Positions 393 through 63,611 of a DNA stretch of 64,000 nucleotides are shown piece by piece; the first letter of the stretch is position 1, and the number at the start of each line of letters is the position of its first letter. This DNA is from Phaeosaccion multiseriatum (lineage: Eukaryota > Protista > Ochrophyta, other classes). The position numbers and the translations under genes are program-made. The stretch covers positions 186,001 to 250,000 of the forward strand of contig OZ218954.1 of assembly GCA_965112735.1 (NCBI GenBank), written 5' to 3'. The notes under the pieces were generated by a model. That model was not told where the DNA came from, did no database searches, and was given only the letters and a program-made list of their open reading frames with translations.

Positions 393-3300
393 ATGGGAAG
401 CGTGAGCTCCAGCTCCTCGGTGAGGCCATACCCGCTGCCTGAATCGGCACGAGGAGTCGGCAGAAATAGGAAAGGGGTCAAGGCAAAGCCCCAGCAGCAG
501 CAGCAGCAGCAGCAGCAGCAGCAGTATGATGATGAACAGCAAGGGAGAGGAACAAGCGATCCTGCTTCACCTGTAACTGCCACGGGAAGAGGAGTGGGCT
601 TGCTAAACAATGACGAAGATGCTGTTACACAGGATTCTCCTCCCCCCACAATCCCCTCTTCTCACGGCGGGGAGCGAGGTGGAGGAGGGCCCCATTCGAC
701 TGATACTAAGCTGAAGGTGAACAAGGCGAGGCCGGTGGAGGTAGTGAAAGCCCGAGTGCCCCCCCACCCTGACCGTCAGCCCTCGCACGTGCATCTGCAC
801 GGAGTCTCCAAGCGTGACAAGGTTTGTATTCTTCTCTCTTTCTCTCTCTATATATCTATCTTTCCATCTCTCTCTCTTCTCTCTCTGTCTCTCTTCTCTC
901 TCTATCAATCTCTCTATCCCTTCTCTCTCTATCTTCTCTCTGTCTCTTTCTCTCTGTCTCTCTGTCTCTGTGTGTGTGCATGGGGGCAGGTGGGGATGCA
1001 ATTCATCCTGTTATTAACTCTCCACTCTTCTTGCTCTCAGTCCAAACCATCTCCACCCTGCCCCTCTCTCTCTGTCTACCCTTGGTGAAGATGCGGGCCC
1101 ATCCGGGGCAGGGCAGCAGCATTAACAGTCCATCAACTGCCATCCCCAGCGCGCTCCCTGAAGCAAGACAGCCCCAGCGACAGCAGCAGCAGCAGCAGCA
1201 GCAGCAGCAGCAGCAGCAGCCAGTGCGATGCACCCCGATCCTCACAACGACGGAGACCACCACCGACGTCGTCGCCAGTGCTCACCAAGGCCGTAGCACC
1301 ACGACCACCACCACTGTTACCTACCCGGGCTGGGATGCTGGCTCCGACTCCTCCGACGGGGGGCATGAACAGGATGGTGGTGGGCCGGGGCAGACACGCT
1401 TCAGAAGCTTCGTGCGGGCTCGACGGACCTTCTTTCGCGCTATGGCTCTCGTCTCTGAAACACCGATTGGTGCTACGCTGGGACACCACACTCACAGGGC
1501 TTCCCCACATACGCCAACACGGAAATCTATCCCTGGGGCGGTAGGACAGGGGGGGGGGGCAGCAAGTCCCCTCCCAGGAGCAGCAGTTGGTGATAAGGCA
1601 GTCGCTCAAGGGCAAGGGCAAAAGCCATATGTGATGTCTGCGGAGTGTGTGGAGGAGGGCTTCAGTGAGGGCAGCAGCAGGGATCGAGACAAAGACTCAA
1701 CTGTCACAGTCACAGATGGCAGCAACGACACCCACCGAGACGATGATGCTGATGATGATGCGGATGATGATGCTGCTGATGATGATGATGATGATGATGA
1801 TGATGATGGTGATGATGATGATAATGATGATGATGATGATGATGATGATGATGATGATGATGATGATGATGATGACGGGGGTCACGTCATTGTCGGGGAC
1901 CGTCCTGCGAGCCTTCGAATCTGCGAGCGTCGCCAGGGAGTGCACACGCTAAGGAGCGTTTTGCGTGACTTATCTCTGCGGCAGCGCCTCCGAGAGTTCA
2001 TGGTCGTGGACTTTGATGAAGCACTTGTGGATTGCTGGATTGACTGCGTGGCCTTCCAACATGCCGTCTCGGAAAAGCTCCAGCAGCCCCACCCTTCTCC
2101 TCCTCAAGGCCACAAGGCCAACCAGGACAAGAAGGACGAGCCGCAGCACCGGCAGCAGCACCAGCACCACCACAAGCTCCACCGCCACCACCACCACGCT
2201 CCTCAGGCTGCCGCGAAAGCGACTGCGAGTGTGGCAGCGGATCGGGGATACAAACACGTCGCTGTAAGTGTATCACCAACCGCTGGGGCAGGGGAAGGAG
2301 GAGCTCACGACGCCGGTTACAACGCCGACGCAGCTGCTGTATCACCAACGGGGAAGGAAGCTCTGGCGATTCTTGCGAGCCGCGCGGTGTACATTTACGA
2401 TCGGTACGTGTCTCTGTTGTGTATGGCTGTGACAGGTGTGTGTGTGTGTGTGTGTGTGTGTGTGTGTGTGTGTGTGTACATCTGTGTGTGTGTGCGTGCA
2501 TGTGTGTGTGTGTAGTGTACGTGTGTGTACGTGTGTGTGTACGTGTGTGTACGTATGTGTGCGTGTGTGTGCATGTGTGCATGTGTGCATGTGTGTATGC
2601 GTGTGTGTGTATGCGTGTCTGTGCGTGAGTGTGTGCGTGAGTGTGTGCGTGAGTGTGTGCGTGTGTGTGTGCGTAAGTGTGTGTGTGTGCGTGTGTGTGT
2701 GTGCGTATGCGTGCGTGTGTGCATGTGTGTGTATGTGTGTGCGTGTGTGTACACGTGTGTGTGTGTGAGTGTGTGCGTGGGTGCATACGTGTGTGGGTTA
2801 TAGGCGTGTGTCATGTCTCTACGGAAGGGGTGTGACTCCACGATCAGGGCATTGTGTAGTCGGCACGTCCATAACATACTTATCGTGGACGGTTACAACT
2901 TATTCGAGCGCCCGAGGGAGGAGGCCATCATTCACCGCATCCCTCCCCTTCATTCCACTGACACTGCATCTTTCATTGACATACTCATACGCAGGTACTT
3001 TTGCCAGTCGTCGCCAGACTGTGTGCACATCGACAAGGAGACTCTCGACGAGATTGAGCGGGATCTGCGCATTCAAAGAGTTCAGGTGCAGGTGGGGATG
3101 GATGGCAGTGGATGGCAGTGGATGGTAGTGGATAGTGTGTGGGTTGATGTCAGGACAGTTAGGACAGTGGCTGGGTGGGCATCAGGACATAGATGGGCGG
3201 GTGTCAGGACCGAGGGTGGGAGTCAGGGCGTGGATGGGCGGGTGTCAGGACCGAGCGTGGGGAATCGGGACGCGGTGAATGTGGAGGTCGGGGGTTGCAG

Positions 3301-62800: not shown

Positions 62801-63611
62801 GTGGATGAGGATGGCATAGGATGGCAGTGGATGAGGATGTCATCCCCTAAAACGTTTGGTTACGTCCCGCCTGACCCAGCCTAACGTGACGTCATGTATC
62901 GTTACGTAACGTGACGTAACCCCCGTCCTTACGTACGTACCTGTATAGTCCGGGCCGCGCTCTCCCTGTCTCTGTACAGGGCATGTCTGCACACCCTTCG
63001 CCACTGCATCATCCGACGGCGGCAGTGCATGGGCTCTCTCCGCCGTATGATGTTCTGTAACCGTCACATATCGTTACGGAATGTGCAGGGGTGCGTCCCG
63101 GGGGGGACAGATAGAGATGGGGCGAGGAGTGGGGTCGGGTCAGCAATTGAGAATGAGCAAGAGCACGAGAGAGAGAGAGAGAGGGAGAGAGAGAGAGAGA
63201 GAGAGAGAGGGAGAGGGGGAGAGACAAAGACCACTCTCTATTCACTATCCTGACACTCACCCACCCTCTGTCCTGACACCCACCCTCTGTCCTGACACCC
63301 ACCTACCCTGTCCTGACACTCACCCACCCTCTGTCCTGACAAACATTACTCTGTCCTGACACCCGATAACCTGTCAGTACTGTCCTGACACCCACCCACC
63401 GCTCAGTCCGGACACTTCTTACCGTCCCTACTGTCTGTCCTGACACCCGTTCCTCTGTCCTGACACGCACCCACCGCTCTGTCCTGACACTCACCCTAAG
63501 CTTGACAGCGGCGTGCCGTTGGCGATAGGAGAGTCCCCTTGCTTTGAAGCGCTGTTCCTCGCAGAAGATCTTCCACACACCAAGCCGAGGGGCCAGCACA
63601 GACAGGCGGAA
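38831..63611 (-). CDS. Very large multi-IQ motif / WW / Tudor-like / SAM-like / B-box zinc-finger protein, 5'-truncated by the window edge, more than 30 exons
   Basis: GT-AG exon chain with many IQ motifs (IQTAWRGHRARR, LQRHWRGWRGRR, LQAGWRGLGARK), a WW domain (WEQLYDDDQG|AFYFYNRDTLETMWEEP), Tudor-like segments (LRVGARVKARW..FYGGRV..YVVRYDDGDVE) and B-boxes (CMSCKTQLATRVCNEC; CGPCDEDLCNDCFKASHSRGKRKKH; CAGCDKLPDVLCIQCNE|AYC..CFVKDH). Stop at 38831-38833. The first visible exon starts at 63611 after an acceptor. Confidence 0.8.
41043..41349. repeat. TACGTA-rich compound minisatellite just after a donor
   Basis: Recurrent CCCCTTACGTAGGCACAT, CCTCACTTAGAGACAC and CCCTAACGTAGGGACGTAC units. Confidence 0.85.
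41895..44176. repeat. ~2.3-kb intronic satellite, 22-bp unit (about 100 copies)
   Basis: Unit CCCACCCTCTGTCCTGACACCC(A/T). It begins exactly at the donor CACAG|GTGGGTGTCAGGAC of the minus-strand gene. The diagnostic variant CACGGTCTCGAC at 42701 and 43073 indicates a 372-bp higher-order duplication. Confidence 0.97.
45979..46113 (-). repeat. 23-bp tandem repeat, 6 copies, carrying the TACTAAC branch-point consensus
   Basis: Sense unit ATTGACTTACTAACCCTCCACCC; the last copy runs into the acceptor CCACAG near 45976. Confidence 0.9.
56950..57703. repeat. ~750-bp (CA)n microsatellite, intronic
   Basis: Directly visible; it reads (GT)n immediately after a donor in the sense strand. Similar tracts at 2436-2790 and 61245-61712. 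Confidence 0.97.
59644..59781. repeat. 27-bp minisatellite, about 5 copies
   Basis: CCAACAGTTTGGGTGTCAGTTCTATGT recurs in tandem. Confidence 0.85.
61871..62181. repeat. (GGGA)n microsatellite, representative of many (4176-4300, 8206-8395, 17654-17921, 49461-49780, 53603-53850, 63627-63872)
   Basis: Directly visible; intronic and adjacent to splice sites. Confidence 0.97.
62250..62341. repeat. 15-bp tandem repeat of CTGTATCACCAACT(A/G), 6 copies
   Basis: Starts a few bases after the donor CAG|GTACGG of the minus-strand gene; same core as the dispersed GTATCACCAAC motif. Confidence 0.9.
62554..62710. repeat. Tandem array of the decamer GGATGGCAGT
   Basis: Largest array of a decamer dispersed through the window; other arrays at 19031-19080, 53243-53290 and 55067-55122. 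Confidence 0.92.

What the first reader, a model, noticed from the sequence alone, without database searches (positions are those of the whole stretch)
3092..62830. Decamer GGATGGCAGT brackets exons with two-fold symmetry, independent of gene strand
Seen: intronic copies sit close to splice sites and point away from the exon. On the + strand, ACTGCCATCC lies left of an exon (7370/7409, 12461-12510, 14990, 19031-19080, 40131-40210, 49793, 52351, 60020-60140, 60730). GGATGGCAGT lies right of an exon (3100, 3890, 12627, 12963, 14430, 15723, 19327, 44300, 50457, 52898, 53243, 55067, 57857, 62554). I found no clear exception in about 25 clusters, in both the + strand RGS gene and the two - strand genes. 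In the transcript the G-rich form follows donors and its reverse complement precedes acceptors. Several exons are enclosed by an inverted pair (12514-12617, 19090-19301, 49835-50437, 52423-52891). Established: zebrafish uses complementary (GT)n/(AC)n intron ends for structure-assisted splicing. Inference: a complex non-polypyrimidine decamer obeying this rule suggests an undescribed exon-marking system. It could be RNA pairing across introns or exons, or a strand-symmetric DNA or chromatin signal (10-bp helical period, oriented protein binding).
Basis: partly seen in the sequence, partly recalled or inferred. Interest (0 to 1): 0.88.

Follow-up and report, generated by a model that had tools for sequence, protein, structure and literature searches.

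The report
Intron-end decamer repeat follows general rule
A 10-base repeat really does sit at intron ends pointing away from exons in this repeat-rich alga, but any G-rich sequence there behaves the same way, so it reflects a general intron design (G-rich start, C-rich AG-free end), not a special exon-marking code.

Summary
GGATGGCAGT occurs 54 times where 0.28 are expected, mostly in 10-bp tandem arrays. I anchored 21 introns of the minus-strand SF3B3 gene by homology and read splice sites elsewhere. About 10 G-form clusters follow donors and about 15 C-form clusters precede acceptors, on both gene strands. No intronic copy breaks the polarity. Three clusters are mid-intron and five copies are exonic.

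With the decamer masked, SF3B3 introns still run from GC skew +0.36 to -0.64 (p=3e-6). Composition-matched 10-mers are 80% G-type after donors and 96% C-type before acceptors. The last 40 intron bases hold 1 AG against 18 expected. The C-form has no AG; the G-form has one per unit.

Both forms share an intron only once, and intron ends pair no better with each other than with ends of other introns. The best reading is a dispersed minisatellite whose orientation is filtered by general splicing constraints.

Why this one unit is so widespread remains unexplained. Earlier scan notes report the same decamer polarity on other pieces of this genome. No RNA data could be laid.

The parts
10570..21392 (-). 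SF3B3 gene, at least 25 exons. 21 introns are resolved by homology and serve as the reference intron set.
   Evidence: PDB match to human SF3B3, E 5e-25. tblastn with P0003. Junction solver.
19037..19076 (-). G-form array (4-5 units) starting 13 nt after the donor at 19089.
19326..19355 (-). C-form copies in the transcript, 24-44 nt before the acceptor at 19302. With the array at 19037-19076 they enclose exon 19090-19301.
   Evidence: Predicted stem encloses the exon, z=-5.1.
12405..12520 (-). 5' end of intron 12514-12246. G-form copies lie at +6 and +41 and a C-form at +85. They form a hairpin that also pairs the donor GGUAAG with CUUACC, so this is an inverted duplication of donor plus array. 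It is the only intron holding both forms.
   Evidence: Fold -61.7 kcal/mol, z=-6.1.
12627..12676 (-). C-form copies 9-49 nt before the acceptor at 12618. With 12464-12508 they enclose exon 12515-12617.
14991..15041 (-). G-form 5 nt after the donor at 15005 (14991-15000), plus one exonic sense copy at 15032-15041 inside a homology-covered SF3B3 exon.
11996..12025 (-). Mid-intron C-form array, 173-193 nt from the acceptor. One AG intervenes, so it is an exception to the first-AG rule.
12964..12999 (-). C-form copies 105-131 nt before the acceptor at 12859, with no AG in between.
3100..3129 (+). G-form array 14 nt after a plus-strand donor (CAG|GTGCAG). A second plus-strand donor case is at 3868-3907 (AAG|GTGAGG).
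   Evidence: Donor PWM scores 9.0 and 9.9.
7371..7419 (+). C-form copies on the plus-strand transcript, 8 nt before a plus-strand acceptor (CCCTCCAG|). A similar single copy at 1136-1145 lies 4 nt before CCAG|.
49799..50464 (-). Exon 49835-50437 enclosed by a C-form 16 nt before its acceptor (50455-50464) and a one-mismatch G-form 27-31 nt after its donor (49799-49808). An exonic one-mismatch copy lies at 49919-49928.
52355..53289 (-). Exon 52423-52891 has C-form copies 5 and 44 nt before its acceptor (52896-52945) and a G-form 57 nt after its donor (52355-52364). The upstream exon 53156-53238 is preceded by 5 C-form units (53240-53289). Its own downstream intron begins with GT-rich repeats, not the decamer.
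55065..55167 (-). C-form array (about 7 units) ending 12 nt before a minus-strand acceptor.
57857..58079 (-). C-form copies spread over about 220 nt, ending 12 nt before a minus-strand acceptor.
62553..62828 (-). Largest C-form array (about 16 units), ending 27 nt before a minus-strand acceptor.
60039..60143 (-). G-form copies 11 nt after a minus-strand donor (ACG|GTGAGG). A further single copy at 60730-60739 lies 14 nt after GAG|GTGAGC.
41767..44175 (-). Large minus-strand intron. Its 5' part is the G-rich 23-bp satellite starting at donor CACAG|GTGGGT. Its 3' end carries variant C-form copies (41791-41830) 24 nt before the acceptor.
44251..44723 (-). Two exonic sense G-form copies (44251-44260, 44714-44723). 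A one-mismatch C-form (44300-44309) directly abuts acceptor TAG| of intron 44556-44298.

Best explanation
GGATGGCAGT is the commonest complex unit among a very large population of intronic tandem repeats, which cover 29% of this window. Its orientation is set at the RNA level by a general rule of this genome's introns, not by a decamer-specific system.

The general rule: the 5' end of an intron is G-rich, and the 3' end is a long, C-rich, G-poor tract almost free of AG.

Acceptor side. The 3' splice site behaves as the first AG after that AG-free tract. A repeat can therefore expand there only if its unit has no AG on the sense strand. The C-form (ACTGCCATCC) has none. The G-form has one AG, a CAG, per unit, and would create a cryptic acceptor every 10 nt.

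Donor side. G-rich sequence is favoured, as with known G-run intronic enhancers, and the G-form fits this.

Symmetry. The donor and acceptor of an exon face opposite directions. One transcript-level rule therefore gives a two-fold symmetric DNA pattern on either gene strand.

Status of each step. Shown here: the polarity, the composition gradient, the AG exclusion, and the equal behaviour of composition-matched decamers. Inferred: that selection on splicing filters the orientation, that arrays grow by slippage, and that copies of the unit are dispersed at the DNA level in either orientation before being filtered.
For: - Gradient with the decamer masked: GC skew is +0.36 in the first 60 nt and -0.60 in the last 60 nt. 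First exceeds last in 19 of 21 SF3B3 introns (p=2.9e-6). Quintiles are +0.36, +0.08, -0.21, -0.44, -0.64. Exons are near 0.04.
- Replication in crudely predicted introns: plus-strand gene 12 of 13 (p=0.001); other minus-strand genes 35 of 40 (p=9e-8).
- Composition-matched 10-mers: 80% G-type after donors and 96% C-type before acceptors.
- Other repeat families follow the gradient (Spearman -0.42, p=0.04).
- Intron ends: G 36% and C 16% in the first 60 nt; C 43% and G 10% in the last 60 nt. GGG counts are 44 against 0, and CCC counts 6 against 38.
- AG exclusion: AG in the last 40 nt is 1 observed against 18.3 expected. The nearest upstream AG is 30-461 nt away, median about 95.
- First-AG rule: for 16 of 18 C-form clusters the first AG downstream is the acceptor.
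- Repeat landscape: 193 arrays cover 18.3 kb. The decamer is the fifth family by number of loci.
- Precedent: G triplets near the 5' splice site and C triplets near the 3' splice site in human introns (PMC4691745).
Against: - The same complex 10-mer recurs in about 30 places in 64 kb, in exact reverse-complement forms. The composition filter does not explain this, and the dispersal mechanism is unknown.
- The decamer's polarity is perfect where about 80% is expected on the donor side. The joint probability is 0.058, which is borderline.
- Period 10 is over-represented among arrays: 18 arrays, against 6 at period 9 and 3 at period 11.
- Exon models outside SF3B3 rest on reading by eye, a weak PWM and a crude gene-finder.
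- No RNA-seq junctions were available.
- Only one 64-kb window was analysed. The genome-wide claim rests on unchecked notes by other readers.
Confidence: 0.6

Rival explanations
1. Decamer-specific RNA pairing. G-form and C-form copies pair with each other as a dedicated mechanism. They would either bridge an intron's two ends, or loop out an exon to cause exon definition, skipping or back-splicing into circular RNA.
For: - The two forms are exact complements.
- Four exons are enclosed by an inverted pair.
- Predicted stems are long and far more stable than shuffles: z=-5.1 around exon 19090-19301 and z=-6.1 in intron 12514-12246.
Against: - Only 1 of about 25 decamer-bearing introns holds both forms. 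There the partner lies 85 nt from the donor, so it does not bridge the intron.
- In SF3B3 the overlap between the 3 G-form introns and the 7 C-form introns is 1, against 1.0 expected.
- 4 enclosed exons are observed against about 2 expected from cluster frequencies (Poisson p about 0.14).
- An intron's own ends pair no better than ends of different introns (p=0.67), and shuffled sequences pair nearly as well.
Confidence: 0.12
2. A purely mutational by-product with no function. Slippage amplifies whatever sequence lies next to the splice-site cores: the G/T-rich donor consensus and the C-rich acceptor tract. Introns fill from both ends with repeats of opposite composition, and the decamer is one such product.
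For: - Several arrays start at or include the splice signal itself. Examples are the 28-mer at 12075-12157, which begins at the donor, (GAGT)n and GGGT repeats after donors, and the 42-44 kb satellite starting at GTGGGT.
- Nearly every intron is filled with arrays up to the splice cores.
Against: - Independent seeding at donors and at acceptors would not yield the same 10-mer in exact reverse-complement form.
- AG is depleted 18-fold beyond what composition predicts in the last 40 nt. That indicates selection, not mutation alone.
Confidence: 0.16
3. Remnants of an intron-generating transposon (introner or MITE). Its terminal inverted repeats would be the decamer next to splice signals, so that it is spliced out in either orientation.
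For: - Inward-pointing inverted symmetry about the intron is what terminal inverted repeats give.
- Donor-side context (GTGAG + GGATGG) and the reverse complement of the acceptor-side context (CTGAG + AGATGG) differ essentially at one base.
- This genome holds other dispersed words that are copied as DNA (notes s1-348028, s1-331318).
Against: - Both ends are almost never present in one intron.
- Nothing is conserved beyond the decamer in the flanks.
- Copy number (1-16 units) and offset from the splice site (5-57 nt) vary widely.
- The rest of each intron consists of unrelated repeats.
Confidence: 0.08
4. A strand-symmetric DNA or chromatin signal. For example, an oriented DNA-binding protein or 10-bp helical phasing of nucleosomes would mark exon borders independently of transcription.
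For: - Exact 10-bp period, with an excess of period-10 arrays.
- Two-fold symmetry about exons on both gene strands.
Against: - The symmetry follows automatically from a transcript-level rule.
- Copies track GT and AG splice sites to within a few bases.
- The splice-site-free outer flanks of the first and last SF3B3 coding exons carry none.
- Only about a third of splice sites carry the decamer at all.
- Unrelated repeats with the same G/C bias occupy the same positions in other introns.
Confidence: 0.04

Closest known systems
[quoted passage not shown] 2016, PMC4691745; McCullough and Berget, as cited there)
   Same: G-rich elements lie within tens of bases after the 5' splice site and C-rich elements before the 3' splice site of the same transcripts. 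The two ends are generically complementary.
   Different: - Here the elements are long tandem arrays, including a 10-nt unit, that fill most of each intron.
- The gradient spans the whole intron.
- The AG-free zone is very long, with a median of about 95 nt.
- No intron-specific complementarity was found.
Teleost and lamprey (AC)m-(GT)n structure-dependent introns (Lin et al. 2016, PMC4691745)
   Same: A simple repeat and its complement are placed at opposite intron ends. The trait is lineage-restricted, with fast repeat turnover.
   Different: - In fish the two complementary repeats co-occur in one intron and bridge it. Here the two decamer forms almost never share an intron.
- The composition is reversed: here the 5' end is G/T-rich and the 3' end is C/A-rich.
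Introners (intron-generating transposons; PMC9860276, PMC12130899, listed)
   Same: Repeated sequence lies at intron ends, with inverted symmetry, in an alga.
   Different: There is no shared full-length element and no paired termini. Only a 10-nt unit with variable copy number is shared.
Inverted repeat pairs flanking circularised exons in animals
   Same: Four exons are flanked by perfectly complementary intronic repeats that could loop the exon out.
   Different: The number of such exons is about what chance placement gives. No RNA evidence of back-splicing exists.

Membership tests
Structure-bridged introns ((AC)m-(GT)n or (GGG)m-(CCC)n type) | The complementary repeat pair sits at the 5' and 3' ends of the same intron | tested here: not met
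   For the decamer, 1 of about 25 bearing introns has both forms, and there the partner lies 85 nt from the donor. At the level of composition alone (G-rich 5' end, C-rich 3' end), first-60 skew exceeds last-60 skew in 19 of 21 introns.
Structure-bridged introns ((AC)m-(GT)n or (GGG)m-(CCC)n type) | Intron ends pair more stably than controls | tested here: inconclusive
   Mean duplex energy is -33.0 kcal/mol for an intron's own ends, -34.0 for cross-intron pairs (p=0.67) and -30.5 for shuffled sequences. 3'-3' pairs give -10.5, so the complementarity is generic and compositional.
Structure-bridged introns ((AC)m-(GT)n or (GGG)m-(CCC)n type) | Splicing depends on the structure and is independent of U2AF2 | not testable with these tools
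   Needs minigene or knock-down experiments.
G-run enhancer / C-rich tract with AG-exclusion zone | G triplets enriched just downstream of the 5' splice site | tested here: met
   GGG 44 against CCC 6 in positions +7 to +66 of 21 introns. G is 36% and C is 16%.
G-run enhancer / C-rich tract with AG-exclusion zone | AG depleted upstream of the 3' splice site, and the first AG after the tract is used | tested here: met
   AG is 1 observed against 18.3 expected in the last 40 nt. The nearest AG is 30-461 nt upstream. The first AG after a C-form cluster is the acceptor in 16 of 18 cases.
G-run enhancer / C-rich tract with AG-exclusion zone | Bound by splicing factors (hnRNP H/F-like, PCBP- or U2AF-like) | not testable with these tools
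   Needs CLIP or pull-down experiments.
Introner / TIR transposon-derived introns | Many introns share a near-identical element along its whole length | tested here: not met
   Flanks of the clusters share nothing beyond the splice consensus. Intron interiors are unrelated repeats.
Introner / TIR transposon-derived introns | Terminal inverted repeats at both ends of one intron, with target-site duplication | tested here: not met
   Both forms are present in only one intron and are not terminal there. Target-site duplications were not examined.
Slippage-driven minisatellite | Head-to-tail copies in register with variable copy number between loci | tested here: met
   Arrays have 2-16 units at exact 10-bp spacing.
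Slippage-driven minisatellite | Length polymorphism between individuals or reads | not tested

The most novel reading that the evidence does not exclude
The exact complementarity of the two decamer forms is functional. Arrays flanking an exon, or lying at the two ends of an intron, would pair in the pre-mRNA. Such pairing would regulate exon inclusion, back-splicing, or donor accessibility, as in the hairpin that sequesters the donor of intron 12514-12246. This would give the alga a repeat-encoded, fast-evolving layer of splicing control, including in the spliceosome gene SF3B3 itself.
Probability: 0.12. Interest if true: 0.7.

Novelty: new variant of a known kind. Interest (0 to 1): 0.4.

Why it matters
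The decamer is not a new code. The architecture it reveals is an extreme form of something known only weakly in vertebrates.
- Introns here are built almost entirely of tandem repeats.
- A G-to-C gradient spans the whole intron.
- AG-free zones commonly run about 100 nt or more.

This makes the alga a natural system for two questions. The first is how 3' splice sites are chosen by scanning for the first AG. The second is how fast-mutating repeats are tolerated, or used, next to splice sites.

For annotation, the rule (G-rich repeats after donors, AG-free C-rich repeats before acceptors) could improve gene prediction in this repeat-rich genome. The unexplained spread of one exact 10-mer, and of other dispersed words in the same genome, points to a DNA-copying process that is worth identifying.

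Tried and rejected
1. RNA evidence. Only one metatranscriptome run held 5% of the words of the stretch searched (12000-19500). Only local scripts read the whole window.
2. Organism identity was not established. The closest SF3B3 relatives are unnamed metatranscriptome or Logan proteins. An exon search gave only a partial brown-alga hit. The protein atlas gave nothing. Earlier notes say only 'alga'.
3. A relative's genomic SF3B3 (L001) proved to be a distant, intron-poor, 42% GC organism without the decamer.
4. A metagenome scan for three tandem units found 2 contigs with unrelated single arrays.
5. A codon-usage segment finder was too noisy, because repeats scored as coding.
6. The Viterbi gene-finder recovers 17 of 21 SF3B3 introns but over-predicts elsewhere. 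It was used only for the coarse gradient test.
7. Literature searches found no paper describing the decamer or this intron architecture in algae. The Emiliania genome paper is not held.
8. The RGS identity of the plus-strand gene was not confirmed. There is only a sub-threshold Pfam hit, and the PDB search was swamped by a poly-Gly read-through of a repeat.
9. Rfam found no RNA family in the window.

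
Full report
**Observation**

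GGATGGCAGT occurs 54 times exactly on the two strands of the window, against 0.28 expected from shuffles. At one mismatch or fewer it occurs 91 times against 6.4 expected. The copies form 38 clusters, mostly head-to-tail arrays of 2-16 units at exact 10-bp spacing.

The window is 57% G+C and unusually repeat-rich. 193 non-overlapping tandem arrays cover 18.3 kb, or 29% of it. The decamer is the fifth most frequent family by loci, after AGGG, AGG, AG and AC. It is the only recurrent family with a complex unit.

**Exon models**

The minus-strand gene between about 21392 and 10570 is SF3B3. One ORF fragment matches human SF3B3 structures at E 5e-25.

An exhaustive protein search gave a full-length relative, P0003 (1245 aa, 74% identical over the query). 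tblastn with it lays out at least 25 exon blocks. A junction solver then resolved 21 introns. It required open frames, phase compatibility, GT/GC..AG ends and agreement with the relative's length. All 21 are GT..AG, and most have zero length penalty. This is my reference intron set.

No RNA evidence could be added. Only one metatranscriptome run held 5% of the words of the searched stretch. I worked beside those places and sent none of their letters to any search tool.

**Polarity**

In the 21 SF3B3 introns:
- G-form: 7 copies in 3 introns, all 5-43 nt from the donor.
- C-form: 12 copies in 7 introns. They lie within 9-49 nt of the acceptor in four introns and mid-intron in three.

In the other genes I read the splice sites directly. 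Typical contexts are GAG|GTAAGG followed by the G-form, and the C-form followed by a few bases and CAG|.

Window-wide tally:
- About 10 donor-proximal G-form clusters.
- About 15 acceptor-proximal C-form clusters.
- 3 mid-intron C-form clusters.
- 5 exonic copies, all sense G-form.
- No intronic copy in the wrong orientation.

25 of 28 intronic clusters lie within 60 nt of the matching splice site, where 21% would be expected by random placement (p about 1e-14).

Four clusters (1136, 3100, 3868, 7371-7419) sit at plus-strand GT or AG sites that cannot be read as splice sites on the other strand. The rule therefore holds on both gene strands. The plus-strand gene's RGS identity is supported only by a sub-threshold match.

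**Is the polarity specific to the decamer?**

It is not.
- With every decamer-like 10-mer masked, GC skew of the sense strand is +0.36 in the first 60 nt of SF3B3 introns and -0.60 in the last 60 nt. First exceeds last in 19 of 21 introns (p=2.9e-6).
- The gradient is smooth across quintiles: +0.36, +0.08, -0.21, -0.44, -0.64. Exons are near zero.
- It replicates in introns predicted by a crude gene-finder that does not use skew. The plus-strand gene gives 12 of 13 (p=0.001) and the other minus-strand genes give 35 of 40 (p=9e-8). The decamer-free lectin locus shows it more weakly.
- Arbitrary 10-mers with G minus C of 4 or more, or -4 or less, are 80% G-type in the first 60 nt and 96% C-type in the last 60 nt.
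- Under that background, the decamer's perfect polarity has probability about 0.06.
- Other repeat families follow the same gradient (Spearman -0.42, p=0.04). They also abut the splice-site cores, so proximity is not special to the decamer either.

It was tested here on one window, not genome-wide.

**A mechanism for the acceptor side**

The last 40 nt of the 21 introns contain 1 AG, where their own composition predicts 18.3. The nearest upstream AG is 30-461 nt from the acceptor, with a median of about 95 nt. G falls to 10% while A stays at 22-24%. GGG occurs 44 times in the first 60 nt and never in the last 40. CCC shows the reverse, 6 against 38.

The C-form unit contains no AG, whereas the G-form contains one (a CAG) per unit. 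For 16 of 18 C-form clusters the first AG downstream in the transcript is the acceptor. An array can therefore expand in the 3' zone only in the C-form orientation. The G-form would place a cryptic acceptor every 10 nt.

On the donor side, G-richness matches the known G-run intronic enhancers. Lin et al. 2016 (PMC4691745) describe G triplets in the first 40 nt and C triplets in the last 40 nt of many human introns, and (AC)m-(GT)n introns in fish.

**Is pairing involved?**

Where both forms are close together, the predicted stems are strong.
- The first 116 nt of intron 12514-12246 fold into a hairpin of -61.7 kcal/mol (z=-6.1). It even pairs the donor GGUAAG with a downstream CUUACC, so this is an inverted duplication of donor plus array.
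- Exon 19090-19301 is enclosed by a C-form/G-form stem (z=-5.1).

Such co-occurrence is rare, however.
- Only that one intron carries both forms. In SF3B3 the overlap of G-form and C-form introns equals the chance expectation.
- Four enclosed exons compare with about two expected from cluster frequencies. That expectation uses a rough intron count.
- The 5' and 3' ends of the same intron pair no better than ends taken from different introns (permutation p=0.67). Shuffled sequences pair nearly as well.

Any bridging would therefore be generic G-rich to C-rich pairing, not decamer-to-decamer pairing.

**DNA-level readings**

The two-fold symmetry about exons follows automatically from one transcript-level rule, because an exon's acceptor and donor face opposite ways. 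The splice-site-free outer flanks of SF3B3 carry no copy. That covers about 500 nt before the ATG and about 650 nt after the stop. The nearest upstream copy (22336) lies in a G-rich tract about 145 nt after a strong minus-strand donor-like site.

A transposon (introner) origin is not supported. Paired termini are lacking, flanks share nothing beyond the splice consensus, and copy number and offsets vary.

One fact stays unexplained. The same complex 10-mer is present in about 30 places in 64 kb in exact reverse-complement forms. According to unchecked notes of this scan, it is also present on many other pieces of the genome. Independent local seeding would not produce this. Some DNA-level copying in either orientation, followed by the orientation filter, is the most economical reading. 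I could not identify the carrier or the process.

The arrays appear restricted to this genome or lineage. Three tandem units occur in only two of 241 million metagenome records, as unrelated single arrays. A distant relative's SF3B3 locus has none.

**Comparison and novelty**

The architecture works like the G-run/C-run arrangement of GC-rich vertebrate introns, and it has an AG-exclusion zone, in an extreme and repeat-built form. It does not meet the defining feature of structure-bridged introns for the decamer, namely a complementary pair in one intron. It does not meet the defining features of introners either.

I found no paper describing the decamer or this intron design in algae. The organism could not be identified, so a species-specific genome paper may have been missed.

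I rate it a new variant of a known kind, of moderate interest. It is one visible case of a general splicing-linked composition rule, not an independent exon-marking system.

The scan has noted the same decamer polarity before on other DNA of this genome (s1-346013, s1-354740, s1-354730, s1-357574). It has also noted the general 5' G-rich / 3' C-rich repeat polarity (s1-331577).

Noticed in passing
window:10745-21210 (SF3B3 introns): AG-free zones before acceptors are very long. The nearest upstream AG is 30-461 nt away (median about 95), and AG is depleted 18-fold beyond composition in the last 40 nt. This suggests first-AG scanning from distant branch points.
   Followed up: partly
window:41895-44176: The 23-bp satellite (about 2.2 kb) is the G-rich 5' part of a minus-strand intron. 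It begins at donor CACAG|GTGGGT (44175) and ends in variant C-form copies near an acceptor at about 41767. The satellite unit resembles the donor-proximal sequence.
   Followed up: partly
window:15032-15041, 44251-44260, 44714-44723, 49220-49229, 49919-49928: There are five exonic copies of the decamer, all in the sense G-form. Two (44714, 49220) lie right after an acceptor and one (15032) lies just before a donor. They may be exonised intron ends.
   Followed up: partly
window:12246-12310: The acceptor plus exon start (GGTATACAG|GCTGATGA) is duplicated 58 nt upstream of the homology-supported acceptor at 12246. This is a possible alternative, frame-shifting 3' splice site in SF3B3.
   Followed up: no
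window:12075-12157: A 28-bp unit repeated three times starts exactly at the donor of intron 12158-11823, so the donor sequence GTGAGTTTCAGT is itself part of the repeat.
   Followed up: no
window-wide; e.g. 15110, 15422, 14089, 49449, 56332-56347, 62252-62327: A second dispersed word, GTTGGTGATAC, has 47 hits at one mismatch or fewer. Its complement sits 8, 8 and 15 nt before three SF3B3 acceptors, but two copies near a donor are in the same C-type orientation. Its polarity is therefore not strict here.
   Followed up: partly
window:22346-40129: There is no exact decamer copy across about 18 kb that includes the lectin locus. Predicted introns there show a weaker G-to-C gradient (16 of 22).
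   Followed up: partly
window:18622-19266: A 214-codon ORF reads in frame through a whole intron, across its decamer and (AGG)n arrays. ORF-based gene calls on this genome will therefore fuse exons and translate repeats.
   Followed up: no
window-wide: Period-10 tandem arrays are over-represented: 18 arrays against 6 at period 9 and 3 at period 11. They include variant units such as ACTCCCATCC.
   Followed up: no
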